The notes under the pieces are model-generated. The model was not told the origin of the DNA and searched no databases. It saw only the letters and a program-made list of their open reading frames with translations. A stretch of 64,000 bases of DNA from the NCBI RefSeq assembly GCF_006345805.1, contig NC_043023.1, forward strand, positions 9,114,001 through 9,178,000, given 5' to 3'. This DNA comes from Octopus sinensis (lineage: Eukaryota). The position numbers were made by a program, and so were the translations under genes. This document shows positions 10,342-34,907 of this stretch, in pieces (the stretch's first letter is position 1; each line of letters begins with the position of its first letter).

Positions 10342-11037
10342 GTAAGTATTTATGTGTTTTATTGCCCTAATTTTATGTTGTCTTCGCAATTAATATTACT
10401 CGATTTATTTATGCGTTGAATAATGAAGAAGCTACCATCAAGATGAAGCCAAGGATCTGATCCCTGGTAGCTACACACTGATACTGTTTTTGCTTTCTTT
10501 CTTTGTGGATGTCTGTCTTCTCATCTGCTCCGCCTTTCAATTCACTAAGACTAAATATCTATTAGGACATAGCTTCAAAAATATGGATGAAAGTAATATA
10601 CAAAAATAAAACAAAAACATGTACATCAAGGCAGATGTGAGCAACTTCGCAACGGCACTTCGGGCGATTGTTCAGTAAAATCGAAAGCGGCAGTGAACTT
10701 TTAGTTCCTATCTTGTTGGGCTACTGCGGCCTTCGGCGGCTGATGCAGAATGCTGCGAAAACCTATAACGGCAGTCGAGATACCAGAAACATTGAGCGAC
10801 TGTAAGACGCGTAAATCGTCTTTTGGGGCTGGTCTACCAAACAAGTTTTATATATATATATGCCAGACGTATTCGCCGATGTCTACTCCAACGGAAAACA
10901 AAATGGGATAATTCCCAGTTTTTTTAGTAATTCCGATGAAGGAAAGCGCAAACAGGGGCGGAGACGGAACTCAAAATCCCCAGCCCATACCTCTACTCCA
11001 CACAGAGATTAATGATTGATTTTCTATTTCTTTGTAG

Positions 11038-11429
11038 CTGTTGGTTATCCAGCACGGCTTTCTATGCTGCCCTCCTGGCTCCCGTGGCGCTCATCCTCCT
11101 CTTCAACATTACTATGTTTTCTCTCGTTATGAGGAGTCTTAACTCAATGCAAAATGACAAGAAATTTGAACACAAACCAAAAAAAGTACGTGTTTTTGGC
11201 ATCGTTGGATTGTGTTTCCTGCTTGGATTTCCCTGGCTCTTACCATTCTTTGGTTTTGGTGAAGCAGCTGAAGTGTTTCGCCTTCTTTTTGCTATATTCA
11301 CTCCCCTTCAAGGAATGTTTATCTTCCTATGCTACTGTATATACAAAAAAGATACCAGAGACGTCATTTGCCTGTTCGTATGTAAACGAAAAACATGGGA
11401 GCTGTGGGAAGATCCGAAGAATATAAAAA
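11038..11429 (+). CDS. adGPCR copy 1 exon: ECL2-TM5-TM6-TM7-helix 8
   Basis: tctttgtag / gtaagt; CWLSSTAFYAALLAPVALILLFN...GLCFLLGFPW...LQGMFIFLCYC; lies within ORF-track 11012..11518. Confidence 0.95.
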
Positions 11430-11596
11430 GTAAGTGTAATTTGGTCTCTTTAATTGCTAGAGTCACAAAAACCAATATTGTCATGATGTTACAATCAATA
11501 TCATCACTTTTAGGATAGACTTCGTCATAAATATCAACACCACTGTCATCATCATCATCATCATCATTATATACAAGTATATATCCTCACTACGTC

Positions 11597-12140: not shown

Positions 12141-12419
12141 ATAATATTGGGGAGTAAATCCAAACTTACCGCGAAGAATTAGATTTAGTATTAAATCTAA
12201 TTTTACAGTATAAATATATATATATATATAAAATTAGAGATAAAACTACTATTAGGCAAATCAAACAGTGAAAAACATAAACCAAAACAGAAATAAAATT
12301 AATTAATATAATATACAAAATATATAAAATATAAAATTCAAATTTAAATTATTTAAATTTAAAGCTAAAAATTAAAAATTTAAAAAAATTATTAATTTAT
12401 ACTTATAAATTTATATATT

Positions 12420-12491
<72 letters not shown>

Positions 12492-13162
12492 TTTATTATT
12501 ATTTTTTATTTTTATTTTTATTTTTTATTTATTTAATTATATATTTATTTACATTTTTTATTATTTTTTTTATTTATTTTTATTTTTATTTATTTTTTAA
12601 TAAAATATATTATATTAAATATATATAACTATCAAAAAGTATCAAAAATTTAATAAAAGGTAAAAAACAAGTTATTTCGTGTGTGTGTTTGGTGTATGCA
12701 TGTATGTGAGTGTGCTCACGTGTGTGTGCCTGTGTGTGTGTGTACGTGCGTAGTAAACATTAAAGAACAGATATCCTAAAACATCACTATACGTGTTTCA
12801 ATAGCATGTTATTTCTCTCTAATATAATGTGTATTATATGTTACATTATGTAAACTCACATATAGGTGTGAGTGGATTTGGTAGACAGAAACTGAAAGAA
12901 GCCCGTCGTATATATGTTTATATATTAGCAATTGAGGATAAAATCTTTAAAATAAATTATCAGTAGTTAGCGTAAAAAACCTCGTAAGAGAAGAAATCCG
13001 TAAATTTTTCCACTTTGAAAATATTTATTTATATTATATTGAGGGTACTACTATTCGTAGATACCATACGCTAAGAGGGACCAATGCGGTCAAAACTACT
13101 AAAATAAACAAAATTTTACCGAATGCAAAACTTCAAAGCAAATCATTTACAAAAAGAATTTA

Positions 13163-13226
13163 GTTACATATCACCTGTGATTTCGCAATTAATGCAGAAT
13201 ATGCATTCCATGTTCATCAGTGCAAC
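13163..13226 (-). ncRNA. Type-I hammerhead motif (left arm of 13031-13651 fold-back)
   Basis: Reverse complement of 13456-13519. Confidence 0.78.
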
Positions 13227-13455
13227 AAACTCAAGATATATAAGAAAAAACATAACGTTACGAGCTCGATAGCCAACGGAATAGTTCAATACTGAATTTT
13301 TATTCCGAGTAAGCAATTTGTTATCGAAATGCATTGCGAATAAGCCCGCCATTTTCATAGATATGTAAAGATAAACATTCGTACATGCTACGACGAATTC
13401 TGCGGTTGGCTATCGAGCTCGTAACTTTATGTTTTTTCTTATATATCTTGAGTTT

Positions 13456-13519
13456 GTTGCACTGATGAACATGGAATGCATATTCTGCATTAATTGCGAA
13501 ATCACAGGTGATATGTAAC
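13456..13519 (+). ncRNA. Type-I hammerhead motif
   Basis: gttgca-CUGAUGA-..aatgca tattc tgcatt..-GAAA-tcac ag gtga-UA-tgtaac; stems I, II and III all pair; AUA triplet. Confidence 0.8.
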
Positions 13520-13662
13520 TAAATTCTTTTTTTAAATGATTTGCTTTGAAGTTTTGCATTCGGTAAAATTTTGTTTATTTTAGTAGTTTTGACCGCATTG
13601 GTCCCTCTTAGCGTATGGTATCTACGAATAGTAGTACCCTCAATATAATATATATATATATA

Positions 13663-13985
13663 GGCGCATGGTTCCGGGTTCAATCCCACTGCGTGGCACC
13701 TTAGGCAAGTGTCTTCTGCTATAGCCTCGGGCCGACCAAAGCCTTGTGAGTGGATTTGGTAGACGGAAATATATGTGTGTGTGTGCGTGTATGTAGGTGT
13801 GTCTGTGTTTATCCCCCTAGCATTGCTTGACAACCGATGATGGTGCGTCACTTAGCGGTTCGGCAAAAGGGACGGTAGAATAAGTACTGGGCTTACAAAA
13901 GAATAAGTCCCGGGGTCGAGTTGCTCGATTAAAGGCGGTGCTCCAGCATGGCCGCAGTCAAATGACTGAAACAAGTAGAAGGAAA
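13663..13985 (+). mobile_element. SINE family B
   Basis: Shared body with the copies at 33128, 35392 and 61203. Confidence 0.82.
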
Positions 13986-17322: not shown

Positions 17323-17556
17323 TTATATATGAGGATAATATCGATATTTAAATATCCATATTATCAAGTGGCCAGCATGGGAAAAATACCGTACAAAGGT
17401 AATAATTTTTAACAATTAAAAATGAGGGTGTCTAAGAGACACCAACATGCCGAAATAGCAGTCGAAACTCTGACTATAAAAACCACGTTAAGGGTTCGTG
17501 TCGCACCATGAGATAAGACAGAGGGACAAAATATACAAGCAAAAATTATTGAATAA

Positions 17557-17613
17557 TTCAAGATCCAGGATTTCTGGTTTTGCTTTAAATAAGCTTTACC
17601 GTCATCGGTTGAA
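17557..17613 (-). ncRNA. Type-I hammerhead-like motif, U4C core variant (left arm)
   Basis: Reverse complement of 17670-17726. Confidence 0.65.
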
Positions 17614-17669
17614 TATATCAAGAGTACATAAATATTTATTTATTTATGTATTTATGTACTCTTGATATA

Positions 17670-17726
17670 TTCAACCGATGACGGTAAAGCTTATTTAAAG
17701 CAAAACCAGAAATCCTGGATCTTGAA
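17670..17726 (+). ncRNA. Type-I hammerhead-like motif, U4C core variant
   Basis: ttcaa-CCGAUGA-cggt..gctt attt a aagc..acca-GAAA-tcctgga-UC-ttgaa. Confidence 0.65.
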
Positions 17727-17861
17727 TTATTCAATAATTTTTGCTTGTATATTTTGTCCCTCTGTCTTATCTCATGGTGCGACACGAACCCTTAACGTGG
17801 TTTTTATAGTCAGAGTTTCGACTGCTATTTCGGCATGTTGGTGTCTCTTAGACACCCTCAT

Positions 17862-17972
<111 letters not shown>

Positions 17973-17974
17973 AT

Positions 17975-20585
17975 TATGTCAGGTCGCTCTAGAGTGCTAC
18001 TGGTAACATGTAATCCAGTACAACCTGTTGCATGGTCGGGACGTCGGCGACTAAACTGACAACCCCACCAGGCCACCCTCAAGATTGTCCAGACCTATGC
18101 TCCCACAAGTGCCAGCGACGACGACGAGGTGGAAGAATTCTATCGACAACTAGACAAAGGGCTGGCTATGAAGTCCACTTACACTGTCGTGATGGGAGCC
18201 TTCAACGCAAAGGTTGGACATGGACAAGGAGAGGAATACGTCGGGAGATTTGGCATGGGAGAGAGAAACGAGAGAGGAGAACGTTTGGCTACCATTGCAG
18301 AGGCGAGGCAGCTCTACATGGGAAAAAGCCTATTCAGGAAGAGGGAGAGGAAGAGATGGACTTGGATATCGCCGAACTCTAAGCACCGAAGCGAGATCGA
18401 CTACATCCTGGTTGATAAGCGACGCATATTGCATGACGTCTCCGTCGTGACGCCATTCAACACCGGCAGCGATCATCGTCTGGCAAGGGCGAGGGTCGTC
18501 ATCGACGAGAAGAGGGAGAAGATGGCGTTATATTTGGCGTCGAAGGGAAAACGTGTCCGAGTCTACAACGAGGCAAAGCTGCAGGAAGCCATCATGCAGG
18601 AAGACTGGTGCCAAGGAGACGACATAGACGATGACTACAACTCACTGATAGGGAAACTAAAGGAGTGTTTAAGGAAGGCTAAGGGCGTATGCCCAAGAGA
18701 AAAGAAGGGAAGAATCTCGGAAGAAACTACGAAGTTACTCGAGAATAGGAAAAATATGAAGAGGACTATTGAAGATCACCTTGAATATTCCATTCTCAGC
18801 AGAGTGATTCGTCAGCAACTAAAGAAAGACTTTGAGGCATACCGGATGGAGAAGCTCTTGAAGGCCGCAGAAGAAAAGAAGAGCCTCAAGAAATGCAAGA
18901 GGGACATGGTACTATATAGATCGGAGGTGACGGCCCTGAAAAACACAGATGGAATACCGGTCAACGAGAAGAGCGAGATGGAAAAAGTTTGTGAAGACTT
19001 CTACACCAAGCTCTTTAAGTCTGCCAGAAATGTCCAGCCGTTACCACCACTCCAACAGGAAGAAAACGTGCCACCTATCCTTGTCAGTGAGGTTGAAAGA
19101 GCCATCGGCTCGATGAAAAACGGAAAGGCTCCAGGGAAAGACAGTATAACATCGGAGGAGCTAAAGTCAGGCAGAGAGCAGGTCTGGAAAATCCTCGCTG
19201 AGCGATTTGCGCACTATCTAGACGAGGGAAAAATTCCCTCGCAGTGGAAAGAGTCAAATACCATCCTGCTGTATAAGAAGGGCGACAGAGAAGATCTAAA
19301 GAACAACCGACCCATATGCCTGCTGTCTCACGTGTACAAGCTGTTCACGAAGATAATTCTGAACAGGTTGTCACGTCGTCTCGACGAACAACAACCGAGG
19401 GAGCAAGCAGGCTTCCGGAAGAACTACAGCACAATGGACCATATATTTGCTCTAACGCAACTGCTTGAGCGAGCAAATGAGTACAAGCTGCCTCTTTGCG
19501 TTGCGTTTATAGATTATGAGAAGGCCTTCGATAGCGTCGAAACCAACGCAGTGCTGAACTCGCTGCAGAGGCAAGGAATCGAAGCGCAATATGTGCAGCT
19601 GCACAGAGAGGCAAATTCCGGATGCACCACCGACATAGCTCTACTGTCATCACCCATACGAGTGTCGGTCGAGAAGGGAGTGAAGCAAGGAGATACAATC
19701 TCCCCAAAACGTTTCACTGCATGTCTCGAACGAATCATCAGAGGCATCGAATGGCAAGGTGGTGTCAACATCAATGGCGAGCTCCTCACTCACCTCCGTT
19801 TCGCTGACGACATCGTACTCATCGCTGAAAACATGGATCAGCTTCAGACCATGCTGACGGAGCTCGACATCAAAAGTTCTGCAGTAGGTCCCAAGATGAA
19901 CCGCATGAAAACAAAGTTCATGCGGTCAGACAATGTACCAACAGATCGAATGGTGATCGGCAGTGATGAAATAGAGGAGGTGAGAGAATATGTCTACCTG
20001 GGACAGGAAGTAAATATGTGCCGGGATATCAAAAAGGAGATCTCACGGAGAGTAAGGGCCGGATGGAAGGCGTTCAATGGCATAAGGGATGTGCTCAAGG
20101 GAAGGTTGGACAGAACCACCCGCGCCAACCTCATTAACAGTGCAGTACTGCCTGCAATGTTATATGGTACTGAAACAAGGGCTACCACAAAGAGAGAAGA
20201 GCAAAGACTGGTAACGGCTCAAAGAGCCATGGAAAGGTCAATGCTTGGTATCTCGCTGAGAGAGCACATACGTAGCAAGATCATCAGAAAGAAGTCCTGC
20301 GTGAGGGATCTCATCGCAAAGTATACACGCAGCAAGTATAGATGGGCTGGACACGTCGCCCGGCTCACCGATAATCGGTGGACGCACGCAGTTTCCGAGT
20401 GGTAGCCGCGTGAGCGGAAAAGACCACCCGGAAGAGCTCCACGACGGTGGAGTTACGATTTCAGGAGGACGATTGGGATCACGTGGATGAGAAAGCCGCG
20501 ATCCAGAGAGGAGTGGACAGCTTGCTGTGACCAGCGGTGTCAAATGGACGTCTGACGGACTGGTCAGTCAATTTGATCAAAGTGA
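17975..20585 (+). mobile_element. RTE-clade non-LTR retrotransposon, 5' endonuclease region deleted or truncated
   Basis: ORF 18129..20405 carries the APE C-terminal half (YAPT just upstream in frame, GxFNAKVG, EIDYIL, GSDHRL) and RT (KAPGKD, EQAGFRK, DYEKAFDSV, GVKQGDTISP, LRFADD, YVYLG). The frame continues past one TAG to 20555 (KRPPGRAPRRW); short gatcaaagtga tail. Confidence 0.92.
18129..20405 (+). CDS. RTE endonuclease/reverse transcriptase ORF (758 aa, partial, premature TAG near C-terminus)
   Basis: ORF track; APE and RT motifs as listed for the element. Confidence 0.88.
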   Translation: MEEFYRQLDKGLAMKSTYTVVMGAFNAKVGHGQGEEYVGRFGMGERNERGERLATIAEARQLYMGKSLFRKRERKRWTWISPNSKHRSEIDYILVDKRRILHDVSVVTPFNTGSDHRLARARVVIDEKREKMALYLASKGKRVRVYNEAKLQEAIMQEDWCQGDDIDDDYNSLIGKLKECLRKAKGVCPREKKGRISEETTKLLENRKNMKRTIEDHLEYSILSRVIRQQLKKDFEAYRMEKLLKAAEEKKSLKKCKRDMVLYRSEVTALKNTDGIPVNEKSEMEKVCEDFYTKLFKSARNVQPLPPLQQEENVPPILVSEVERAIGSMKNGKAPGKDSITSEELKSGREQVWKILAERFAHYLDEGKIPSQWKESNTILLYKKGDREDLKNNRPICLLSHVYKLFTKIILNRLSRRLDEQQPREQAGFRKNYSTMDHIFALTQLLERANEYKLPLCVAFIDYEKAFDSVETNAVLNSLQRQGIEAQYVQLHREANSGCTTDIALLSSPIRVSVEKGVKQGDTISPKRFTACLERIIRGIEWQGGVNINGELLTHLRFADDIVLIAENMDQLQTMLTELDIKSSAVGPKMNRMKTKFMRSDNVPTDRMVIGSDEIEEVREYVYLGQEVNMCRDIKKEISRRVRAGWKAFNGIRDVLKGRLDRTTRANLINSAVLPAMLYGTETRATTKREEQRLVTAQRAMERSMLGISLREHIRSKIIRKKSCVRDLIAKYTRSKYRWAGHVARLTDNRWTHAVSEW

Positions 20586-20717
20586 TATATATTAATAAAA
20601 GGGATTCTAACCTTGTCTGATTTTCACGTTTTATTTACAATCTTATAATGATATAATAAAATAAAATAATATAATATAATAAAATAAAATAATAGAATGT
20701 TAAATGTTCATTCTGAT

Positions 20718-20762
20718 TGAACTAGTACTTTCATGCATTAAATTCTGCAATCTTCAGGTTCA
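20718..20762 (-). ncRNA. Hammerhead motif in 3' pLTR of left PLE arm
   Basis: Identical core to 25062-25106 on the reverse strand. Confidence 0.78.
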
Positions 20763-23700
20763 TGTAGTAGTGGTGACAGTTATGCTTCACAATTTTTGAC
20801 TGTAGCGAGATGATTAAATCTGTGCCTTAAATACAGCTGTGTAGGTTCCAGATTGCTAGGTTTTGATAACTGTATTCTAACCAATCAGTGTGTAGTATCA
20901 CTCAATTACTTAAGCTGATTGGTTGGTTGAGCTGATTGGTTTAGGCGTCACGCTTTGTTGAACATGTCAAGAGTCCTGTATCTTAACCCTGGCCGAGGCA
21001 GCAATTGTTGGGCTATTTTTAGAAATGTTGTAAATAGCCTTTGTCAGGGATTTCTATATTTCAATTGTCATCATTATCTTCGTCAGCACCTTAATTATTG
21101 TTGCTAGTGGTGATGGTGGTGGTAATAGAACTTTTAACCCTAAATAAGATAATTTTCCTGCTATCTTCATCTTGATCACCTTTAGTATTGTTGTTGTTGT
21201 TAGTGGTCATGGTCGTAGCAGTAGAAGTAGTACCTCTAAGTATTATTATTACTGCTTATTTAGCTTGGGTTCGAATTTATCAATAAAATTCTTTTCTCTG
21301 ATTTTCCTCTCGATTTCACTTGGGCTGTGTAATTTGTAGAATGGAAATATTATATATATTTTCCGACCACATGTTGCTAGGTGGTTACTCAAAGGTATCT
21401 GACGGAGCTCTGGGTCTCTAATCTGTTGTCGGTGTACACGTGAGCGTTCTGATAGTGCATTTCCCGTCGGACCTACATATATTTCTTCACAATTTGGGCA
21501 TTTGATGCAGTAAATTAAATTTTTGCTTTTGCAGTTCATATTCGCGTTTCTGAATATTTTCCCGGTTTTTGTGTTTATATGTTGGCCGGTATGTATGAAT
21601 TGACATGTGCTACATCGGCTATCATTGCATTTAGATACAGTGAATGTTTGGTCTTTGTTGCTAAGGTCAAATTTTGCCTTTGTTAGTAATTGTTTCAAGT
21701 TTTTAGGCTGTCTTTTACTAAGAACAATAGCTCGATCCGTGATTATATCTTTTAATTCATTACTTTGAGCAATGATTGGTAGGTTTGCTTTGGCAATGTT
21801 GAAGATATTCTGGTGACATGGGTTGTGTGTCACTATGAATGGTATGACTTGTTCTTGTTTTCCTCTTCCTTGGGTTGTCCTAAGTTGTTGTATGGGTATT
21901 TTTATAGCCCGCTGTATGCCATTTTCTATAAGTAGAGATGGGTATTTTTGTTTGAGCAAAAATTCTCTTAGTTCTGTTAGGCGTTTGTTCCTGATATTTG
22001 CATCTTCTACAATGGTACAAATTCTTCTGGTTAGGCAGTATGGGATGTTACGTTTTGTATGTGGTGGATGTCACGACTTAAAATTCAGTTATTGATGTGT
22101 GTCTGTGTGTTTATAGTATATATCTGTGGTGATGGTGGTGTCCTTTTTAATTACCATTATATCTATGAATGGTAATTTGGTACTACTCATCTCCTTTGTA
22201 AATTGGAGAGATGGGTGTAGGTTGTTCAGGAGGATATTGAACTCTTCCAGAGTATTTAGAGATTCTGTCCAGATTATGCAGCAGTCGTCAAGGTATCTCT
22301 TCCATGCCTTTTCAATATACTTTCTAAATCCAGTGCCATAGTTTACCTCCACCTCTTGGTAGAGTTGTTGTTCTAAGTATCCAATTACAGAGTTGGCGTA
22401 AACGGGAGCAAACCTCGTTCCCATCGCCGTGCCTCTAATTTGGATGTAATTCTTTCCATTGAAGAAGAACGTGTTGTTTTCTAGAATAAGTTTGACTGTG
22501 TCTAATATAAATGGCACTGTGAATCTGCTGGGAATCACTTCTCTATGTTTTTCTAACCAGTATTTAATCGCCTTTATTCCTAAATCGTGTGGAATATTGG
22601 TGTAGAGGCTTACCACATCAAAACTTAGTAAAACTGAATTTGTTTCTGTTGTTTTGGGAAGATGGGACAAGAAGTCGATGTCATCCCTGATGAAACTGGG
22701 TAAGTACATAGTGGTTTCAAAACAATGTCAATAAAATTGATTAGACGGTGGGTAGGGCATGCTGGACCAGCTATGATAGGTCTAAGTTTTAGGTCTTTTG
22801 GATGTAGTAATTTTATGTACTCACTTTCTTGTTCTTTTACTGCCTGTTTAATATCTTTTGATTTATGTATTTTCGGTAAGCCGTAGAAGTTGCTGGGTTT
22901 TGGTTCGAAATTGGTGATGTAGTCTCTTTCATTATCGGTAAGTGAGTTGTAGTGTTTTGGAATCAGGTTGTTGATCTTTTTCATGATGTGGTGGTCTATA
23001 TTTGAGGGTATTTCACAATAGAAAGTTGTGTCCTTCAGTTGGTCCTCAACCAATTCCTTATAGTATTCGGTATCCATAATAACAATTGCACCACCTTTAT
23101 CTGCTTGTTTTATTATTATTGTTTGATCGTTTTGTATACGTTTACATGCAGACATCTCTGATTTGCTAATGTTTGGCCTAACATTGGTATTGCGTCTAAG
23201 GGGAAATTTAGACAGGATATCAATGTATTGGTCAAAATAGTTATTTCTTCCTTTTGGTGGGGTGAAATTTGATTTATTCCTTACTAGGGATTCATCAATC
23301 TCATTACTTTTGTTAGCGAAGAATTCTACAAGTCGTAATTTTCGACAGAATTTTTGGATAGCCTCCTTTAATTCTTGGTGGTTGGCTGTTGGTGTAGGTG
23401 TGAATTTCAGTCCTTTTGACAGAAGTTGGATTTCATCATTGTCAAGATCTCTTTTTGATAAATTAATTATTTTAGGATCTATACGTTCAGTTGTTTTGGG
23501 TATGTTTCCTCTTGGATTTTTTCTTTCTCCGGTGTTTGTTGTCCTGACGTAAAAAAATGGATTTTTTCCCGTTTATGATTTATATTCCTGTTGATGTTTG
23601 CTTGATGAATTTTGCGTTTTGGTTGTGGTATTTTACCTGGTTTCGTTATGTTTTCTGTCTTGCTTTTCGTATTATGTATATTATTTTATATTATTTTTCA

Positions 23701-24962
23701 CTTTCTTGTTAGTATTGTTTTTAACCACCTGGGGAAATGATCTGGGTTTACTTCCAGATCTAGATCGGTTCTTTGTCCAGTTTCTTGTGGGTAATCTCTG
23801 TTGAGGTCTTGAAAATGATCTCCTGTTATTTCTACTGCTAATGGTCTGATCAAAAGAATATCTATTTTGTTTGTGCTTTTTGTTCATGTTGTGTGCATTA
23901 GGGTGTTTGCATACAAAAAGGGAAGAGTTCTTACCGTAGTTCGTCTTCGATTCGTGGTGAAACGGGTGTTCATGTTGCCACGTATTCTGGCCTATGTTGC
24001 GTTGGTGAGGTTGTCCACTTTTAATGCTATTTCTCAGAGTTCTGGTGACTTTACCGTAATTTGTAGCATATTTGTCGAGAAATAATTGTTTCCGATGCCA
24101 AAACTTTCTTGATCTGCTTTCTTCTTTTGAGATATCTCTGGTCCATAGTTCTCGCATTTTTCCTGCTATATTGCCGGTCGCTAGTTTGGATATTTCGTCT
24201 CTGATTTGATCATCGATAGCTTCGTATTTGGCTTTGTAGCGGAATTGTTTAGACAGGGTAATGGAGATGTCGGTCCTGAATTTTATCAAACTAAGGTCCC
24301 ATCGAAGTTTTGTTCTTTCCTCTGGTTCTCCTGCAATATCATTAATTAGGTACTTCCGAGGAAGTATGGGTGCCGCTAAAGATATCCATTCCGAATGTAT
24401 TTCAGCATATTTTTCGCATTTATATGCCTTCCACAAGTTTTGTTTTCTTATGTTAAGGAGTTTTTTTCCATGTCTTCCGTATCTCTTCTCTTTTTCGGTG
24501 TGCCTCTTTTTCCAGATTTCTTCCGTTTATTTCTGACATTCAAGGAGGTTGTGGTAGGCTTTCTCTTGTTGGTATCATTTCAGCTAAATTCTTAATTTCA
24601 GAGTTTATATGTTCATTTCCAAGTTTTCCGCCTGTAGACTGTTTTTCTATTTCCTTTAGAATAGAGGATTGTGTGTCAATCATCGTGATGAGTGTTGATA
24701 ATTTCGATGAAATTTCCATTAGAATTCTTTCTGATTCTGTTAATTTTGTTTGTTGCTTTCCAGACATGTTGGCATATACACAATAGGAATATAGATATAT
24801 ATATATACGGGTGTGTGTGATTGTGTATAGAAGAATATATTAATAAAAGGAATTCCAACCTTGTCTGATTTTCACGTTTTATTTACAATCTTATAATGAT
24901 ATAATATTAAATAATATAATATAATAAAATAAAATAATAGAATGTTAAATGTTCATTCTGAT

Positions 24963-25007
24963 TGAACTAGTACTTTCATGCATTAAATTCTGCAATCTTC
25001 AGGTTCA
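24963..25007 (-). ncRNA. Hammerhead motif in 5' pLTR of left PLE arm
   Basis: Exact reverse complement of 25062-25106. Confidence 0.78.
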
Positions 25008-25061
25008 TGTAGTAGTGGTGACAGTTATGATATAATATAAGATAATGTCACCACTACTACA

Positions 25062-25106
25062 TGAACCTGAAGATTGCAGAATTTAATGCATGAAAGTACT
25101 AGTTCA
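25062..25106 (+). ncRNA. Minimal hammerhead motif in 5' pLTR of right PLE arm
   Basis: tgaac-CUGAAGA-u-tgca gaatttaa tgca-u-GAAA-gtac-UA-gttca; palindromic AGUACU stem III of the dimer-type PLE hammerheads. Confidence 0.8.
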
Positions 25107-26909
25107 ATCAGAATGAACATTTAATGTTCTATTATTTTATTTTATTATATTATATTATTTAATATTATATCATTATAAGATTGTAAATAAAACGTGAAAA
25201 TCAGACAAGGTTGGAATTCCTTTTATTAATATATTCTTCTATACACAATCACACACACCCGTATATATATATCTATATTCCTATTGTGTATATGCCAACA
25301 TGTCTGGAAAGCAACAAACAAAATTAACAGAATCAGAAAGAATTCTAATGGAAATTTCATCGAAATTATCAACACTCATCACGATGATTGACACACAATC
25401 CTCTATTCTAAAGGAAATAGAAAAACAGTCTTCAGGCGGAAAACTTGGAAATGAACATATAAACTCTGACATTAAGAATTTAGCTGAAATGATACCAACA
25501 AGAGAAAGCCTACCACAACCTCCTTGAATGTCAGAAATAAACGAAAGAAATCTGGAAAAAGAGGCACACCGAAAAAGAGAAGAGATACGGAAGACATGGA
25601 AAAAAACTCCTTAACATAAGAAAACAAAACTTGTGGAAGGCATATAAATGCGAAAAATATGCTGAAATACATTCGGAATGGATATCTTTAGCGGCACCCA
25701 TACTTCCTCGGAAGTACCTAATTAATGAAATTGCAGGAGAACCAGAGGAAGAAACAAAACATCGATGGGACCTTAGTTTGATAAAATTCAGGACCGACAT
25801 CTCCATTACCCTGTCTAAACAATTCCGCTACAAAGCCAAATACGAAGCTATCGATGATCAAATCAGAGACGAAATATCCAAACTAACGACCGGCAATATA
25901 GCAGAAAAAATGCGAGAACTATGGACCAGAGATATCTCAAAAGAAGAAAGCAGATCAAGAAAGTTTTGGCAGCGGAAACAATTATTTCTCGACAAATATG
26001 CTACAAATTACGGTAAAGTCACCAGAACTCTGAGAAATAGCATTAAAAGTGGACAACCTCACCAACGCAACATAGGCCAGAACACGTGGCAACATGAACA
26101 CCCGTTTCACCACGAATCGAAGACGAACTACGGTAAGAACTCTTCCCTTTTTGTATGCAAACACCCTAATGCACACAACATGAACAAAAAGCACAAACAA
26201 AATAGATATTCTTTTGATCAGACCATTAGCAGTAGAAATAACAGGAGATCATTTTCAAGACCTCAACAGAGATTACCCACAAGAAACTGGACAAAGAACC
26301 GATCTAGATCTGGAAGTAAACCCAGATCATTTCCCCAGGTGGTTAAAAACAATACTAACAAGAAAGTGAAAAATAATATAAATAATATACATAATACGAA
26401 AAGCAAGACAGAAAACATAACGAAACCAGGTAAAATACCACAACCAAAACGCAAAATTCATCAAGCAAACATCAACAGGAATATAAATCATAAACGGGAA
26501 AAAATCCATTTTTTACGTCAGGACAACAAACACCGGAGAAAGAAAAAATCCAAGAGGAAACATACCCAAGACAACTGAACGTATAGATCCTAAAATAATT
26601 AATTTATCAAAAAGAGATCTTGACAATGATGAAATCCAACTTCTGTCAAAAGGACTGAAATTCACACCTACACCAACAGCCAACCACCAAGAATTAAAGG
26701 AGGCTATCCAAAAATTCTGTCGAAAATTACGACTTGTAGAATTCTTCGCTAACAAAAGTAATGAGATTGATGAATCCCTAGTAAGGAATAAATCAAATTT
26801 CACCCCACCAAAAGGAAGAAATAACTATTTTGACCAATACATTGATATCCTGTCTAAATTTCCCCTTAGACGCAATACCAATGTTAGGCCAAACATTAAC
26901 AAATCAGAG

Positions 26910-28139
26910 ATGTCTGCTTGTAAACGTATACAAAACGATCAAACAATAATAATAAAACAAGCAGATAAAGGTGGTGCAATTGTTATTATGGATACCGAAT
27001 ACTATAAGGAATTGGTTGAGGACCAACTGAAGGACACAACCTTCTATTGTGAAATACCCTCAAATATAGACCACCACATCATGAAAAAGATCAACAACCT
27101 GATTCCAAAACACTACAACTCACTTACCGATAATGAAAGAGACTACATCACCAATTTTGAACCAAAACCCAGCAACTTCTACGGCTTACCGAAAATACAT
27201 AAATCAAAAGATATTAAACAGGCAGTAAAAGAACAAGAAAGTGAGTACATAAAATTACTACATCCAAAAGACCTAAAACTTAGACCTATTATAGCTGGTC
27301 CAGTATGCCCTACCCACCGTCTAAGCAATTTTATTGACATTGTTTTGAAACCACTATGTACTTACATACCCAGTTTTATCAGGGATGACATCGACTTCCT
27401 GTCCCATCTTCCCAAAACAACAGAAACAAATTCAGTTTTACTAAGTTTTGATGTGGTAAGCCTCTACACCAATATTCCACACGATTTAGGAATAAAGGCG
27501 ATTAAATACTGGTTAGAAAAACATAGAGAAGTGATTCCCAGCAGATTCACAGTGTCATTTATATTAGACACAGTCAAACTTATTCTAGAAAACAACACGT
27601 TCTTCTTCAATGGAAAGAATTACATCCAAATTAGAGGCACGGCGATGGGAACGAAGTTTGCTCCCGTTTACGCCAACTCTGTAATTGGATACTTAGAACA
27701 ACAACTCTACCAAGAGGTGGAGGTAAACTATGGCACTGGATTTAGAAAGTATATTGAAAAGGCATGGAAGAGATACCTTGACGACTGCTGCATAATCTGG
27801 ACAGAATCTCTAAATACTCTGGAAGAGTTCAATATCCTCCTGAACAACCTACACCCATCTCTCCAATTTACAAAGGAGATGAGTAGTACCAAATTACCAT
27901 TCATAGATATAATGGTAATTAAAAAGGACACCACAATCACCACAGATATATACTATAAACACACAGACACACATCAATACCTAAATTTTAAGTCGTGCTA
28001 TCCACCACATACAAAACGCAACATCCCATACTGCCTAGCCAGAAGAATTTGTACCATTGTAGAAGATGCAAATATCAGGAACAAACGCCTAACAGAACAA
28101 AGAGAAATTTTGCTCAAAAATACCCATACAACAACTTAG
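26910..28139 (+). CDS. PLE reverse transcriptase (frameshifted at C-terminus by a ~50-bp deletion)
   Basis: ORF track; PLE RT motifs ADKG, KIHK, DVVSLYTNI, GTAMG, YLDD, PFIDI. Confidence 0.85.
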   Translation: MSACKRIQNDQTIIIKQADKGGAIVIMDTEYYKELVEDQLKDTTFYCEIPSNIDHHIMKKINNLIPKHYNSLTDNERDYITNFEPKPSNFYGLPKIHKSKDIKQAVKEQESEYIKLLHPKDLKLRPIIAGPVCPTHRLSNFIDIVLKPLCTYIPSFIRDDIDFLSHLPKTTETNSVLLSFDVVSLYTNIPHDLGIKAIKYWLEKHREVIPSRFTVSFILDTVKLILENNTFFFNGKNYIQIRGTAMGTKFAPVYANSVIGYLEQQLYQEVEVNYGTGFRKYIEKAWKRYLDDCCIIWTESLNTLEEFNILLNNLHPSLQFTKEMSSTKLPFIDIMVIKKDTTITTDIYYKHTDTHQYLNFKSCYPPHTKRNIPYCLARRICTIVEDANIRNKRLTEQREILLKNTHTTT

Positions 28140-29238
28140 GACAACCCAAGGAAGAGGAAAACAAGAACAAGTCATACCATTCATAGTGACACACAACCCA
28201 TGTCACCAGAATATCTTCAACATTGCCAAAGCAAACCTACCAATCATTGCTCAAAGTAATGAATTAAAAGATATAATCACGGATCGAGCTATGGTTCTTA
28301 GTAAAAGACAGCCTAAAAACTTGAAAAAAATTACTAACAAAGGCAAAATTTGACCTTAGCAACAAAGACCAAACATTCACTGTATCTAAATGCAATAATA
28401 GCCGATGTAGCACATGCCAATTCATACATACCGGCCAATATATAAACACAAAAACGCGAATATGAACTGCAAAAGCAGAAATTTAATTTACTGCATCAAA
28501 TGCCCAAATTGTGAAGAAATATATGTAGGTCAGACGGGAAATGCACTATCAGAACGCTCACGTGTACACCGACAACAGATTAGAGACCCAGAGCTCCGTC
28601 AGATACCTTTGAGTAACCACCTAGCAACATGTGGTCGGAAAATATATATAATATTTCCATTCTACAAATTACACAGCCCAAGTGAAATCGAGAGGAAAAT
28701 CAGAGAAAAGAATTTTATTGATAAATTCGAACCCAAGCTAAATAAGCAGTAATAATAATACTTAGAGGTACTACTTCTACTGCTACGACCATGACCACTA
28801 ACAACAACAACAATACTAAAGGTGATCAAGATGAAGATAGCAGGAAAATTATCTTATTTAGGGTTAAAAGTTCTATTACCACCACCATCACCACTAGCAA
28901 CAATAATTAAGGTGCTGACGAAGATGATGATGACAATTGAAATATAGAAATCCCTGACAAAGGCTATTTACAACATTTCTAAAAATAGCCCAACAATTGC
29001 TGCCTCGGCCAGGGTTAAGATACAGGACTCTTGACATGTTCAACAAAGCGTGACGCCTAAACCAATCAGCTCAACCAACCAATCAGCTTAAGTAATTGAG
29101 TGATACTACACACTGATTGGTCAGAATACAGTTTGCAAAACCTAGCAATCTGGAGCCTACACAGCTGTATTTAAGGCACAGATTTAATCATCTCGTTACA
29201 GTAAAAAATTGTGAAGCATGACTGTCACCACTACTACA

Positions 29239-29283
29239 TGAACCTGAAGATTGCAGAATTTAATGCATGAAAGTACTAGTTCA
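29239..29283 (+). ncRNA. Hammerhead motif in 3' pLTR of right PLE arm
   Basis: Identical to 25062-25106. Confidence 0.8.
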
Positions 29284-29417
29284 ATCAGAATGAACATTTA
29301 ACATTCTATTATTTTATTTTATTATATCATTATAAGATTGTAAATAAAACGTGAAAATCAGACAAGGTTGGAATTCCTTTTATTAATATATTCTTCTATG
29401 CACAATCACACACACCC

Positions 29418-29571
<154 letters not shown>

Positions 29572-29774
29572 ATCTATATATATATATATATATATAATAA
29601 TAAATATTAGGGAATAAATCCAAATTTACCGGGAAAAAAACAGATTTAGGATTAAATCCAATTTTATAGTAAAATATTATATAATATTAATTAGTGACAA
29701 AACCACTATTTTGCAAAACAAACAAGGAAAGACTTAATCAATACATAAAATTTTAATAAAGAGTAAAAAAACCG

Positions 29775-29817
29775 CCACTACCATTGTTTCATGTCCTGAT
29801 CGACAATCTTCAGGTGG
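29775..29817 (-). ncRNA. Type-I hammerhead motif (left arm of 29684-32947 fold-back)
   Basis: Reverse complement of 32816-32858. Confidence 0.75.
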
Positions 29818-32815
29818 ATTTCCAATCTAAAATATCAATATTTTAAAATATAAGTATAAAAAATTATAATTTTAAAATAATTAAAGTATCAATGAAAAAA
29901 TATAAATATATAATCTATATATAACCTATATATAATCCATATATAATCAATATATAAACTAAAATAAACCTATCAACAATTAAATATAAAACAAAATAAA
30001 AATAAACTATATATACACCCAAACACATATAACTAATTATATATAACCATATCTAAATACATACACTAAATCACACACCTATATATATATATCCCTATAC
30101 ATACACATAAAAACGTCTAGGCAACGATAAATGAATAAAATAGCCAAATACTTCAACACAATACTTATTCATACTCCCTCACACACACATACAACCCACA
30201 TTCATAAACAATATACGTATACCCGCTCACACATACATATACAAACATACAGAACTCGATATATACACCAATATATTCACACCCACAACTATACAGATAA
30301 ATAAATTACGCAAATAATCCCCCCACACACACACCCATTCACACATACATAAACACTCAAAAGCAAAATAAATAATTATTTGCACGTGGTGATCGAACGT
30401 TTTTTTTTTAAATTATAAATGGAATAATATATAATCAACTTAAATATACAGAATCTACTACAAAACACCAATAAACCATCATGATAAATTAAACCCACAT
30501 ACATATTATGATAAAACTCCCCTAACCATACACAATTACACCTATATAGCAATCCCATATACACATTCACACAGAAATATACATACGTAAAACACACACA
30601 CACACAACATATACGTATACCCCCTCACATATACATATACATACTTACTAAACTCGATATATACAACAATATTTTCACACCCACACTCATACAGATAAAT
30701 AAATTACACAACTAAAATACGCACACACACACACATTCCCACATACATAAACACTCAAAAGAAAAACAACATTACTACTCATAATAAGATATATAAAATA
30801 CTTCATAAGTAACCAGAATATCAAAAGTAACAAGATTAACATAATGAGAAAAAATATACATACTTTCAAGTCAGTTTCAAATTATGAAGTGAAATTAAAT
30901 TCTAGGCGTTAAAAACGTCAAACAAAATTACGTTACCATAGGAACCTAACATATGTATAAAAAGTATTTCCGCTCTGGAAACGAACATCATTTAAAATTA
31001 TGAATGGAGAAATGGAATAAATGGAATTAAAAATTATATTCACGTGGTAAACGAACATTACTTAAAAATTATGAATGAAATAATGTAATAAAATAACAAA
31101 CATCGTAAAAAGACATAAATTACTTCGAATTCTTTAATAAAACTACCATGATAAACTAAAACTCATAAAAACATATAATGATAAAACCTCCCTTTACTAA
31201 ACTCTATAACATACCTATATAGGATTGCGCCTATTTTTGGGGATGTATGTGTTTATTTGTCTGTATGGGGTGGGAGTGGGTTTTTGGTGTATATATTGAG
31301 GTTTATACGTATGTATAGGTATGTGTGAGTGAGGTGGGTATTTGTATATGTCGTGGGTGTGTGGTTTACGTGTGTGTATTTGTGTGTGAATGTATAGGTT
31401 AGGGGGATTGCTATATAGGTATGTTATAGAGTTTAGTAAAGGGAGGTTTTATCATTATATGTTTTTATGAGTTTTAGTTTATCATGGTAGTTTTATTAAA
31501 GAATTCGTAGTAATTTATGTCTATTTACGATGTTTGTTATTTTATTACATTATTTCATTCATAATTTTTAAGTAATGTTCGTTTACCACGTGAATATAAT
31601 TTTTAATTCCATTTATTCCATTTCTCCATTCATAATTTTAAATGATGTTCGTTTCCAGAGCGGGAATACTTTTTATACATATGTTAGGTTCCTATGGTAA
31701 CGTAATTTTGTTTGACGTTTTTAACGGCTAGAATTTAATTTCACTTCATAATTTGAAACTGACTTGAAAGTATGTATATTTTTTCTCATTATGTTAATCT
31801 TGTTACTTTTGATATTCTGGTTACTTATGAAGTATTTTATATATCGTATTATGTGTAGTAATGTTGTTTTTCTTTTGAGTGTTTATGTATGTGGGAATGT
31901 GTGTGTGTGTGCGTATTTTAGTTGTGTAATTTATTTATCTGTATGCGTGTGGGTGTGAAAATATTGTTGTATATATCGAGTTTAGTAAGTATGTATATGT
32001 ATATGTGAGGGGGTATACGTATATGTTGTGTGTGTGTGTTTTACGTATGTATATTTGTGTGTGAATGTGTATATGGGATTGCTATATAGGTGTAATTGTG
32101 TATGGTAAGGGGAGTTTTATCATAATATGTATGTGGGTTTAATTTATCATGATGGTTTATTGGTGTTTTGTAGTAGATTCTGTATATTTAAGTTGATTAT
32201 ATATTATTCCATTTATAATTTAAAAAAAAAACGTTCGATCACCACGTGCAAAGAATTATTTATTTTGCTTTTGAGTGTTTATGTATGTGTGAATGGGTGT
32301 GTGTGTGTGTGGGGGGATTATTTGCGTAATTTATTTATCTGTATAGTTGTGGGTGTGAATATATTGGTGTATATATCGAGTTCTGTATGTTTGTATATGT
32401 ATGTGTGAGCGGGTATACGTATATTGTTTATGAATGTGGGTTGTATGTGTGTGTGAGGGAGTATGAATAAGTATTGTGTTGAAGTATTTGGCTATTTTAT
32501 TTATTTATCGTTGCCTAGACGTTTTTATGTGTATGTATAGGGATATATATATAGGTGTGTGATTTAGTGTATGTATTTAGATATGGTTATATATAATTAG
32601 TTATATGTGTTTGGGTGTATATATAGTTTATTTTTATTTTGTTTTATATTTAATTGTTGATAGGTTTATTTTAGTTTATATATTGATTATATATGGATTA
32701 TATATAGGTTATATATAGATTATATATTTATATTATTTCATTGATACTTTAATTATTTTAAAATTATTATTTTTTATACTTATATTTAAAAATATTGATA
32801 TTTTAGATTGGAAAT

Positions 32816-32858
32816 CCACCTGAAGATTGTCGATCAGGACATGAAACAATGGTAGTGG
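32816..32858 (+). ncRNA. Type-I hammerhead motif
   Basis: ccac-CUGAAGA-u-tgtc gatcag gaca-u-GAAA-caatgg-UA-gtgg; GUA triplet. Confidence 0.75.
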
Positions 32859-32942
32859 CGGTTTTTTTACTCTTTATTAAAATTTTATGTATTGATTAAG
32901 TCTTTCCTTGTTTGTTTTGCAAAATAGTGGTTTTGTCTCTAA

Positions 32943-33011
<69 letters not shown>

Positions 33012-33127: not shown

Positions 33128-33129
<2 letters not shown>

Positions 33130-33298
33130 CGCAGGAGTGGCTGTGTGGTAAGTAGCTTGCTAACCAACCACATGATTCCGGGTTCAGTCCCACTGCGTGG
33201 CACCTTGGGCAAGTGTCTTCTGCTATAGCCCCGGGCCGACCAAAGCCGTGTGAGTGGATTTGGTAGACGGAAACTGAAAAAACCTCTCGTATATATGT

Positions 33299-34495: not shown

Positions 34496-34907
<412 letters not shown>

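What the first reader, a model, noticed from the sequence alone, without database searches (positions are those of the whole stretch)
20586..29391. ~8.8-kb palindrome made of two complete Neptune-type PLE copies with a 22-bp spacer
Seen: both arms have 5' pLTR, N-terminal ORF, RT, GIY-YIG and 3' pLTR, giving four hammerheads in total. They meet at 25023/25046 across gttatgatataatataagataa. The arms differ by scattered substitutions and indels, which argues against a simple assembly fold-back. Inverted partial pLTRs are described for Penelope; I am not aware of a full-length head-to-head doublet being typical. Palindromes of this size are generally unstable, so its persistence is notable.
Basis: partly seen in the sequence, partly recalled or inferred. 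Interest (0 to 1): 0.8.

Follow-up and report, generated by a model that had tools for sequence, protein, structure and literature searches.

The report
Head-to-head Penelope-like retrotransposon doublet
The 8.8-kb palindrome is real: it is two dead, full-length copies of one Penelope-like retrotransposon joined head-to-head, the largest example found here of an arrangement already known to be typical of this class, so it is a neat specimen and not a surprise.

Summary
Arms 20586-25023 (element on the - strand) and 25046-29391 (+) are 98.8% identical (51 substitutions, 9 indels) across a 22-nt AT-rich centre. Each arm has a 5' pLTR, an ORF1, an RT plus C-terminal GIY-YIG ORF and a 3' pLTR. Each of the four pLTRs holds an identical minimal hammerhead motif. 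Rfam misses this motif, but it covaries in mollusc relatives.

Both copies are dead, each through its own private frameshifts, deletions or stop codons.

The palindrome ends exactly at the element's 3' termini, with no flank duplicated. One end stops at ...TTAATATAT. The other runs 26-33 nt further (an AC-rich "tail") into (TA)n. That is the published signature of a single PLE insertion unit.

Six of nine chromosome-scale bivalve relatives are also head-to-head, with truncated partners of 200-1,437 bp. A second, non-autonomous PLE-type doublet lies next door in the same microsatellite.

Best reading: one integration event in which both target strands primed reverse transcription and both cDNAs reached full length, followed by neutral decay. 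Head-to-head PLE structures are already described; only the full-length partner is unusual. Assembly fold-back is very unlikely. Interest is modest.

The parts
20587..25029 (-). Left PLE copy, full length: 3' end at 20587, 5' end at 25029. It has no 3' tail.
   Evidence: Arm alignment, four-way pLTR alignment, reading-frame map.
20587..20784 (-). Left copy 3' pLTR. It ends at ...TTATTAATATAT, which I read as the upstream of the two RT start sites.
   Evidence: Direct repeats D4/D7, alignment A1, sequence.
20718..20763 (-). Hammerhead-like motif in the left 3' pLTR.
   Evidence: Descriptor scan, chance control, covariation.
21252..23572 (-). Left RT-EN ORF remnants. Private lesions: +T at 23557, a 4-bp deletion at 22703, and in-frame stops near 22089 and 22071. 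The thumb/linker/GIY-YIG part (22070-21252) is uninterrupted. CNDSRCSTC linker at 21603-21629; GIY-YIG core at 21471-21518.
23684..24771 (-). Left ORF1 region: a 75-aa ORF plus the main ORF1. Private +A at 23687.
   Evidence: ORF1 relatives. The upper bound 24771 is my estimate by symmetry with the right arm.
24835..25029 (-). Left copy 5' pLTR. Positions 25024-25029 (rc CATAAC) continue the template sequence into the 'spacer'.
24963..25008 (-). Hammerhead-like motif in the left 5' pLTR.
25030..25045 (.). AT-rich filler between the two 5' ends (ATATAATATAAGATAA). The last 4-5 nt may be right-copy template with a 1-nt gap. Origin undetermined.
25046..29417 (+). Right PLE copy, full length, including the 3' tail.
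25046..25234 (+). Right copy 5' pLTR.
25061..25106 (+). Hammerhead-like motif in the right 5' pLTR. The predicted cleavage site after GUACUA is at 25101/25102.
25300..26578 (+). Right ORF1 region: a 75-aa ORF at 25300-25527 and a 345-codon open frame at 25541-26575. No Pfam domain. It overlaps the RT frame, which lies in the +1 frame. Both arms share this layout.
26487..28752 (+). Right RT-EN ORF remnants. Motifs: LSKGLKF 26643-26663, DKG 26961-26975, YLDD 27774-27785, linker CNNSRCSTC 28391-28417, GIY-YIG 28483-28743. Private lesions: 50-bp deletion at 28115, +A at 28324, 19-bp deletion at 28451.
29223..29391 (+). Right copy 3' pLTR, with a private 20-23-bp deletion.
29238..29283 (+). Hammerhead-like motif in the right 3' pLTR.
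29392..29417 (+). One-sided AC-rich 3' 'tail' (TCTTCTATGCACAATCACACACACCC). It may extend to 29425. It matches the sequence that follows the 5' pLTRs and is homologous to the Mytilus tail.
   Evidence: literature.
29418..29596 (.). (TA)n microsatellite, the presumed target. A target-site duplication cannot be read.
18129..20584 (+). LINE (APE + RT ORF and about 180 nt of 3' UTR) forming the left flank. The doublet sits at its 3' end.
29597..32960 (.). Neighbouring non-autonomous PLE-type head-to-head doublet. Arms 29674-31233 and 31400-32960 (98.2%). Outward-facing hammerhead cores at 29787-29813 (-) and 32820-32846 (+). One-sided 77-nt extension at 29597-29673.

Best explanation
The palindrome is one insertion unit of a two-ORF, Neptune-like, endonuclease-bearing Penelope-like element in what is most likely a cephalopod genome. 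It has the head-to-head arrangement known for this class, but here the inverted partner is full length instead of 5'-truncated.

Most likely mechanism (inferred):
1. The element's GIY-YIG endonuclease cut both strands of an AT-rich (TA)n target at the 3' end of a LINE.
2. Each exposed 3'-OH primed reverse transcription of a PLE RNA, so the two cDNAs grew towards each other.
3. One cDNA started at the upstream RT start site (...TTAATATAT, left copy). The other started at the downstream AC-rich site 26-33 nt further on (the 'tail', right copy).
4. Both cDNAs ran to within 6 nt or less of the same 5' template position. They were not cleaved at the 5' hammerhead.
5. They were joined across about 10-16 nt of AT-rich filler.

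The two copies were near-identical at birth. They have since decayed neutrally to 1.2% divergence, and each has acquired its own disabling lesions. Today the structure is an inert fossil. If it is transcribed through (for example from the upstream LINE), it would give a 4.4-kb hairpin RNA.

Shown: anatomy, boundaries, tail asymmetry, lesions, and recurrence in relatives. Inferred: both-strand priming, the single event, and any RNA-level effect.
For: - Identity: RVT_1 + GIY-YIG; DKG, YLDD and CX2-5CxxC motifs; more than 1,400 relatives, the best being bivalve PLE proteins of about 750 aa.
- pLTRs and hammerheads: four pLTRs, each with the hammerhead. Hits are 4 against 0.1 expected. Helix II covaries in relatives.
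- Boundaries: the arms end exactly at the element's 3' termini and no flank is duplicated.
- Tail: it is one-sided. It is homologous to the Mytilus tail and equally one-sided in L003, L005 and L006.
- Literature, tail: it lies between two RT start sites and is found at one end of inverted pLTRs (PMC11167929; PMC3846280).
- Literature, mechanism: a PLE protein cleaves and extends both strands and is predicted to be dimeric.
- Recurrence: 6 of 9 chromosome-scale relatives are head-to-head with partners of 200-1,437 bp. Their junctions are not mirror-symmetric, which fits two separate cDNAs. A second PLE-type doublet with an asymmetric centre lies next door.
- Single origin: the four pLTRs are roughly equidistant, 0-2.7%.
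- Neutral decay: 33 transitions to 18 transversions, evenly spread, no conversion tracts. Coding changes are compatible with neutrality. Disabling lesions are private to each arm.
Against: - No reads or population data were available, so neither the single event nor the assembly could be verified directly.
- No target-site duplication can be read because the target is (TA)n. The left flank shows only 2 nt of AT.
- The mirror-like coincidence of the two 5' ends (within 6 nt or less) is also what DNA-level or cDNA fold-back copying would give.
- Both-strand extension has been shown in vitro only for a Poseidon element of a lizard, and that paper does not itself link it to inverted copies.
- The origin of the central filler is unexplained.
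- None of the nine relatives sampled has a demonstrably full-length partner.
- Both arms lack an ATG where relatives start the RT-EN ORF. The template may therefore have been non-autonomous or translated unconventionally.
Confidence: 0.6

Rival explanations
1. Inverted duplication of a single inserted copy. This could happen at the DNA level (replication template switch or fold-back repair at the 5' end), or by the first cDNA snapping back and copying itself during integration.
For: The two 5' ends coincide within 6 nt or less and the centre is a short AT-rich quasi-palindrome. The arm differences look like neutral decay from identical copies. Arkhipova et al. 2013 discuss self-priming for palindromic PLE junctions.
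Against: - A DNA-level duplication is not expected to stop exactly at the element's 3' terminus on both sides, nor to leave one end 26-33 nt longer at a known alternative RT start site.
- No flank is duplicated.
- Upstream of TGTCACC the template has no inverted repeat that could prime a snap-back.
- In relatives and in the neighbouring doublet the junctions are not mirror-symmetric, so snap-back cannot be the family's general route.
Confidence: 0.15
2. Two independent insertions of the same family. The second homed to the AT-rich 5' edge or pLTR of the first, in the opposite orientation.
For: PLE endonucleases prefer AT-rich DNA and can nick their own pLTR region. The 16-nt AT-rich centre could be residual target. 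RT-EN shows a mild, non-significant excess of synonymous differences (pN/pS 0.40, P=0.10).
Against: - All four pLTRs are about equally diverged, which argues for one age.
- Exactly one tail per unit is seen, as in single units of relatives.
- Both copies are full length to within 6 nt and lie only 16-22 nt apart.
- The same plan recurs in 6 of 9 relatives and in the adjacent doublet, which points to a concerted product.
Confidence: 0.12
3. Assembly artefact: a chimeric fold-back read or an inverted haplotig join.
For: PLE tandem/inverted structures are known to trouble assemblies. In L008 a contig ends inside an inverted partner. No reads were available to me.
Against: - The flanks differ: a LINE on the left, (TA)n plus another element on the right. 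An artefact would mirror them too.
- There are 51 transition-biased substitutions and 19-, 23- and 50-bp indels, not homopolymer noise.
- The boundaries fall at biologically meaningful RT start sites, with the published tail asymmetry.
Confidence: 0.04

Closest known systems
Complex tandem/inverted insertion units of EN+ Penelope-like elements (e.g. Pen2a_Av and Pen3/Pen4 in Adineta vaga; Penelope, Neptune and Naiad units of Craig et al. 2021)
   Same: pLTRs with hammerheads, an inverted copy abutting the 5' end (head-to-head), a short palindromic or AT-rich junction, a 30-40-bp tail at only one outer end, and an AT-rich/(TA)n target with an unreadable target-site duplication.
   Different: In this window the inverted partner is a complete 4.4-kb copy with its own 5' pLTR and ORF1. 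Published partners, and the relatives sampled here (200-1,437 bp), are 5'-truncated fragments.
LINE-1 twin priming (Ostertag and Kazazian 2001; cited from my own knowledge)
   Same: Both strands of the target prime reverse transcription, the two cDNAs are joined internally, and the result is an inverted structure.
   Different: L1 twin priming uses one RNA. It yields a 5'-inverted, internally truncated single element, not two copies that each carry a 3' end. The PLE case here needs two templates or a multimeric RNA.
Rearranged Penelope copies with long inverted repeats in transformed Drosophila melanogaster, which give rise to siRNAs (PMC3681739)
   Same: Long inverted repeats of PLE sequence that could form dsRNA.
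   Different: No RNA data exist for this window. Both promoter-proximal ends point outwards from the centre, so a hairpin RNA would need read-through from outside.
Large genomic palindromes maintained by arm-to-arm gene conversion (e.g. human Y ampliconic palindromes; cited from my own knowledge)
   Same: Kilobase-scale arms separated by a short spacer.
   Different: The arms in this window are 1.2% diverged. The differences are evenly spaced and there are no conversion tracts, so there is decay and no maintenance.

Membership tests
EN+ Penelope-like element (PLE) | Reverse transcriptase with PLE N-terminal motifs (including DKG) and YxDD | tested here: met
   RVT_1. LSKGLKF, ADKGG and YLDD located. 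48-65% identity over 90-100% of the query to about 750-aa mollusc PLE proteins.
EN+ Penelope-like element (PLE) | C-terminal GIY-YIG endonuclease with two Cys inside the core | tested here: met
   PF01541 in both arms. Core LIYCIKCPNCEEIYVG with downstream His residues.
EN+ Penelope-like element (PLE) | Pseudo-LTRs (direct terminal repeats from a partial tandem) | tested here: met
   About 190-bp direct repeats in each arm.
EN+ Penelope-like element (PLE) | Optional 30-40-bp tail at only one end of the insertion unit | tested here: met
   A 26-33-nt AC-rich extension at the right end only. It is identical to the sequence after the 5' pLTRs. It is homologous and equally one-sided in Mytilus and Tegillarca units.
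EN+ Penelope-like element (PLE) | AT-rich or microsatellite target, with target-site duplication | tested here: inconclusive
   The right flank is (TA)n. The left flank has only AT before LINE sequence. No target-site duplication is readable.
Head-to-head PLE insertion unit as published | An inverted copy immediately adjacent to the 5' end of the direct copy | tested here: met
   The 5' ends face each other across 16-22 nt.
Head-to-head PLE insertion unit as published | The inverted partner is 5'-truncated | tested here: not met
   The partner is full length, 4.35-4.44 kb, with its own 5' pLTR. This is the one departure from the typical unit.
Neptune clade of PLEs | CX2-5CxxC Zn-finger-like linker between RT and EN (shared with Nematis) | tested here: met
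   CNDSRCSTC (left 21603-21629) and CNNSRCSTC (right 28391-28417). Definition from PMC8557442.
Neptune clade of PLEs | Phylogenetic placement of the RT with reference Neptune elements, and not with Nematis or Penelope/Poseidon | not tested
   No reference clade sequences were on hand. Neptune is also reported as paraphyletic.
Type I hammerhead ribozyme (metazoan/PLE form) | Conserved core (CUGANGA, GAAA, A15.1-U16.1, H17) with helices I and II and a 1-2-bp helix III capped by a small palindromic loop | tested here: met
   The core is complete. Helix I is 5 bp, helix II is 4 bp, and loop 3 is GUAC. In relatives loop 3 is GUAC or GCGC and helix II covaries, with 3 of 5 pairs changed on both sides. 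Helix I pairing was required by my descriptor, so it is not independent evidence.
Type I hammerhead ribozyme (metazoan/PLE form) | G10.1-C11.1 closing pair of helix II | tested here: not met
   The window has U.U at that position. Saccostrea relatives have G-C.
Type I hammerhead ribozyme (metazoan/PLE form) | Match to a curated Rfam hammerhead model | tested here: not met
   No hit at gathering threshold or at E<=10. The fold energy is not better than shuffles (z=0.07).
Type I hammerhead ribozyme (metazoan/PLE form) | Self-cleavage | not testable with these tools
   This needs an in vitro assay of monomeric and dimeric transcripts.

The most novel reading that the evidence does not exclude
In this (probably cephalopod) lineage, complete head-to-head doublets are a regular product of a symmetric, dimeric PLE integration complex and not a rare accident. 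Such doublets then matter biologically, either as divergent twin transcription units or as hairpin-RNA sources that seed small-RNA silencing of the family. Two full doublets of different PLE-type families lie side by side in one microsatellite within 64 kb, which at least hints at regularity.
Probability: 0.12. Interest if true: 0.55.

Novelty: new member of a known kind. Interest (0 to 1): 0.3.

Why it matters
PLE integration is still poorly understood. Both-strand cleavage and extension, two RT start sites and a predicted dimer have been shown only in vitro, and for one lizard element.

This locus is a natural product in which both half-reactions went to completion. One copy ends at each RT start site and both 5' ends are intact, so it gives a clean genomic read-out of that model. 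It also shows that the template RNAs were not cut at the 5' hammerhead.

Practically, it is a reminder that kilobase palindromes in mollusc assemblies can be genuine PLE units and not errors, and that such units can break contigs. It does not reveal a new kind of element or mechanism.

Tried and rejected
- Rfam, at gathering threshold and at E<=10: no hammerhead. The only hits were trivial miRNA-like matches to the palindrome centre and to (TA)n.
- Thermodynamic support for the hammerhead: none (z=0.07). I relied on the motif, the chance control and covariation instead.
- Gene-conversion tracts between the arms: none. The largest difference-free stretch is 487 bp (P=0.16).
- Pre-insertion divergence of the two templates, tested by dN/dS: not significant and underpowered.
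- Other copies of this PLE or of the flanking LINE in the window: none. No empty site or family census was possible.
- cDNA snap-back as the general mechanism: rejected for the relatives and for the neighbouring doublet because their junctions are asymmetric. It is not excluded for the main doublet.
- Hammerhead in the 13-kb palindrome: there is a CTGATGA...GAAA string, but no helix I or II adjacent to the core, so I treat it as chance.
- ARAGORN on the SINE-like repeats: nothing.
- Pfam on ORF1: nothing.
- Exact host species: not identified. The only evidence is two Octopus bimaculoides paralogue hits at 57-59%.


Full report

Yes. Repeat finding shows one large inverted repeat, broken only by small indels, between about 20587-25023 and 25046-29391. 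A gapped alignment of the reverse-complemented left arm to the right arm gives 4,341 aligned columns. There are 51 mismatches (98.8% identity, Jukes-Cantor distance 0.0118) and nine indel events of 1, 1, 1, 1, 2, 4, 19, 23 and 50 bp. The arms meet across the 22-nt GTTATGATATAATATAAGATAA. ORFs lie on the - strand in the left arm and on the + strand in the right arm. The two elements are therefore head-to-head, with their 5' ends at the centre.

**2. What are the arms?**

- The PLE-typical motifs are present: LSKGLKF, ADKGG and YLDD. So is a CX2-5CxxC linker (CNDSRCSTC) just upstream of a GIY-YIG core that contains two cysteines.
- A protein search found more than 1,400 relatives. The best are about 730-780-aa RT-EN proteins from bivalves (Mytilus, Saccostrea, Solemya, Ylistrum, Tegillarca) at 65% identity or less.
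- Upstream of the RT-EN frame both arms carry about 1.2 kb with a 75-aa ORF and a 345-codon ORF1. ORF1 has no Pfam domain.
- ORF1 has relatives. In an ENA contig (L004) and in Tegillarca (L005) it sits upstream of an RT-EN ORF. This is therefore a two-ORF PLE lineage. Craig et al. 2021 note that ORF1 can be separated by a frameshift in some PLE types.
- Each arm is bounded by direct repeats of about 190 bp, the pLTRs.

The linker motif is the published hallmark of the Neptune and Nematis clades. I could not run the phylogeny, so 'Neptune-type' is supported by motifs only.

The only host-gene-like ORF in the window is a 7tm_2 exon. It hits only Octopus bimaculoides adhesion GPCRs, at 57-59%. 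The host is therefore probably a cephalopod; the species is not identified.

**3. The hammerheads**

Rfam reports no hammerhead, either at gathering threshold or at E<=10. The motif's fold energy is no better than that of shuffled sequence.

A simple descriptor (CUGANGA, 6-40 nt, GAAA, and a 5-bp helix I) finds exactly four hits in the window. There is one in each pLTR and all four are identical. First-order Markov simulations give about 0.1 hits.

The motif is UGAAC-CUGAAGA-U-UGCA(8 nt)UGCA-U-GAAA-GUAC-UA-GUUCA. All core nucleotides are present. Helix III is one base pair capped by a palindromic tetraloop, which is the metazoan/PLE design described by Cervera and de la Pena. Helix II is closed by U.U instead of the usual G10.1-C11.1.

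The same motif sits downstream of the EN in relatives, with different helices:
- Helix II is UGUU/AACA, CGUCU/AGACG, UGUC/GACA, GCC/GGC or GCCG/CGGC.
- Loop 3 is GUAC or GCGC, both palindromic.

References.

On a seven-sequence alignment, 3 of 5 helix II pairs change on both sides and the slid-partner controls collapse. Helix I pairing was imposed by my descriptor and is not independent evidence. 'Four hammerheads' therefore stands at the level of motif and comparison. Activity is untested.

**4. State of the copies**

Neither copy is intact, and the lesions are private to each arm.

- Left arm: +A at 23687, +T at 23557, a 4-bp deletion at 22703, and two nonsense changes near 22089 and 22071.
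- Right arm: a 50-bp deletion at 28115 that removes part of the thumb/linker, +A at 28324, and a 19-bp deletion at 28451.
- Shared by both arms: the frame change between the 75-aa ORF and ORF1, the +1 overlap of ORF1 with the RT frame, and the lack of an ATG where relatives begin the RT-EN ORF (window IINGKKSIFY versus P0082 MANGKEEKSFF). I cannot tell whether those shared features are defects of the template or its normal layout.

The substitutions are 33 transitions to 18 transversions and are evenly spaced. The largest clean stretch is 487 bp (P=0.16), so there is no sign of arm-to-arm gene conversion. Coding differences are compatible with neutral change: RT-EN has 11 synonymous and 17 non-synonymous (P=0.10), ORF1 has 1 and 8, and both together give P=0.25. 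The four pLTRs differ by private changes only and are roughly equidistant at 0-2.7%.

All of this fits copies that were near-identical at birth and then decayed. With a generic 1-5 x 10^-9 substitutions per site per year, 1.2% divergence would mean roughly 1-6 million years. This is my inference; no rate for this host was consulted.

**5. The boundaries are the key evidence**

On the left, the element ends at ...TTATTAATATAT (20587) against LINE 3' UTR sequence, with only AT in between. On the right, the arm homology ends at the same nucleotide (29391). The right copy then continues with TCTTCTATGCACAATCACACACACCC (29392-29417, perhaps to 29425) before (TA)n. That extension is exactly the sequence that follows both 5' pLTRs.

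The literature describes this feature:
- A 30-40-bp 'tail' is present at only one end of a PLE insertion unit.
- It is now explained as the stretch between two alternative internal RT start sites, the downstream one lying in an AC-rich region.

In the Mytilus units L003 and L006 the tail (TTCTATACACAAGAAC...) is homologous to the window's tail. It starts at the same pLTR-end position and is present only at the outer end of the inverted partner. The Tegillarca unit L005 behaves the same way.

No flanking DNA is duplicated in inverted orientation. The palindrome is therefore delimited by retrotransposition landmarks. This argues against a DNA-level duplication and against an assembly fold-back.

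**6. The centre**

The left copy's 5' pLTR continues 6 nt into the 'spacer': rc CATAAC, as upstream of the 3' pLTRs. The right copy may continue 4-5 nt with a 1-nt gap. That leaves about 10-16 nt of AT-rich filler.

Both cDNAs thus stopped within 6 nt or less of the same template position, about 56 nt upstream of the predicted hammerhead cleavage site. The templates were therefore not cleaved at the 5' hammerhead. [quoted passage not shown]

**7. How typical is it?**

Arkhipova et al. 2013 call head-to-head 'the most frequently observed' inverted arrangement and report palindromes at the inverted junction. They also report families (Pen3/Pen4) that form long tandem/inverted structures which break assemblies. 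Craig et al. [quoted passage not shown]

| Locus | Host | Head-to-head partner |
|---|---|---|
| L006 | Mytilus | 200 bp |
| L009 | Ylistrum | 276 bp |
| L003 | Mytilus | 563 bp |
| L005 | Tegillarca | 821 bp |
| L007 | Saccostrea | 1,437 bp |
| L008 | Saccostrea | at least 291 bp; runs off a contig end; could reach about 2.6 kb |
| L001 | Mytilus | none |
| L002 | Mytilus | none |
| L010 | ENA assembly (host not named) | none |

So six of the nine chromosome-scale relatives I fetched are head-to-head. In the relatives whose junctions I examined (L003, L005, L006), the 5' end of the direct copy abuts an internal point of the partner. That arrangement cannot arise by a cDNA copying itself.

The window's 4.4-kb partner is the longest seen. 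It is the only one that is complete, so it is the extreme of a known continuum.

**8. A second doublet next door**

The 3.3-kb palindrome at 29674-32960 (98.2% identical arms, 166-nt GT-rich asymmetric centre) has no ORFs and no nucleotide similarity to the PLE. Each arm nevertheless carries an outward-facing PLE-type hammerhead core: CCAC-CUGAAGA-U-UGUC...GACA-U-GAAA...UA-GUGG. The core lies about 100 nt from the outer end, which is the same geometry as in the main doublet.

Its left end has a one-sided 77-nt extension before (TA)n. A diverged copy of the family at about 12.14-12.3 kb carries the same extension next to another (TA)n, so the extension is element-derived. It is most simply a non-autonomous PLE derivative, again a head-to-head doublet with one tail in the same microsatellite.

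**9. Mechanism**

The best-supported model is that both strands of the AT-rich target were cut. Each 3'-OH primed reverse transcription of a PLE RNA, one from each of the two start sites. The two cDNAs met 5'-to-5' and were joined with a little filler.

The in vitro work on a Poseidon element shows cleavage and extension of both strands, two start sites and a predicted dimer. The link to head-to-head units is my inference.

It resembles L1 twin priming, but it needs two templates because both products carry a 3' end.

Rivals: fold-back duplication or snap-back (0.15), two sequential insertions (0.12) and assembly artefact (0.04). These are weighed in their own sections.

A present-day function is unlikely, because both copies are dead. 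Read-through from the upstream LINE would give a long hairpin RNA, as reported for rearranged Penelope copies in transformed flies. That is speculation for this locus.

**10. Verdict**

The finding is a real structure and was correctly identified as a PLE doublet. It belongs to a known architectural class and has an unusually complete partner. Its persistence is not remarkable in a region that tolerates several palindromes. Novelty: new member of a known kind. Interest: about 0.3.

Noticed in passing
window 29597-32960: A second, 3.3-kb head-to-head palindrome (arms 98.2% identical, 166-nt GT-rich asymmetric centre). It has no ORFs, but each arm has an outward-facing PLE-type hammerhead core, and one end has a 77-nt extension. 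It is probably a non-autonomous PLE derivative inserted in the same (TA)n tract.
   Followed up: partly
window 12143-12300: A diverged (about 70-84% identical) copy of the 3' end of that non-autonomous family. It includes the 77-nt extension and also abuts a (TA)n tract.
   Followed up: partly
window 13021-13661 and 17414-17869: Two small near-perfect palindromes (267-nt arms with a 107-nt spacer; 221-nt arms, 100% identical, with a 14-nt spacer). Their termini read ...TGAGGGT and they lie next to (TA)n. They look like MITE or foldback elements. A similar 'aaaaatgagggtact' string flanks the Mytilus locus L003.
   Followed up: no
window 33129-33260, 13664-13700, and several other sites (e.g. 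2350-2765, 34570-34790, 63544-63760): A multi-copy SINE-like repeat beginning GGCGCAGGAGTGGCTGTGTGGTAAGTAGCTTGCT...GGGTTCAGTCCCACTGCGTGGCACC, often directly after (TA)n. From memory it resembles an abundant octopus repeat; this is untested. ARAGORN calls no tRNA.
   Followed up: no
window 18129-20584 and 45324-48188: Two unrelated LINEs with APE + RT ORFs (the second also has zf-RVT). The PLE doublet sits exactly at the 3' end of the first.
   Followed up: partly
window 11012-11518: An exon-like ORF with a secretin-family 7TM domain. Its only database relatives are Octopus bimaculoides adhesion GPCRs (57-59% identity), which points to a cephalopod host.
   Followed up: partly
window 26484-26495 and 23560-23572: Both arms lack an ATG where relatives start the RT-EN ORF (ATC ATA AAC GGG directly after a stop). 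The RT frame overlaps ORF1 in the +1 frame across a GGGAAAAAA run. This could be a template defect or unconventional translation.
   Followed up: partly
L008 1-291 (Saccostrea cucullata contig end): The contig ends inside an inverted PLE partner that would be about 2.6 kb if complete. It is an example of PLE palindromes breaking assemblies, and possibly another near-full-length doublet.
   Followed up: no
protein hits P0008, P0019, P0041, P0085, P0118: Several close PLE relatives are deposited as proteins of bacterial symbionts (Solemya velum gill symbiont, Candidatus Thiodiazotropha). They sit on 3-5-kb contigs and are almost certainly host-mollusc contamination of metagenome bins.
   Followed up: no
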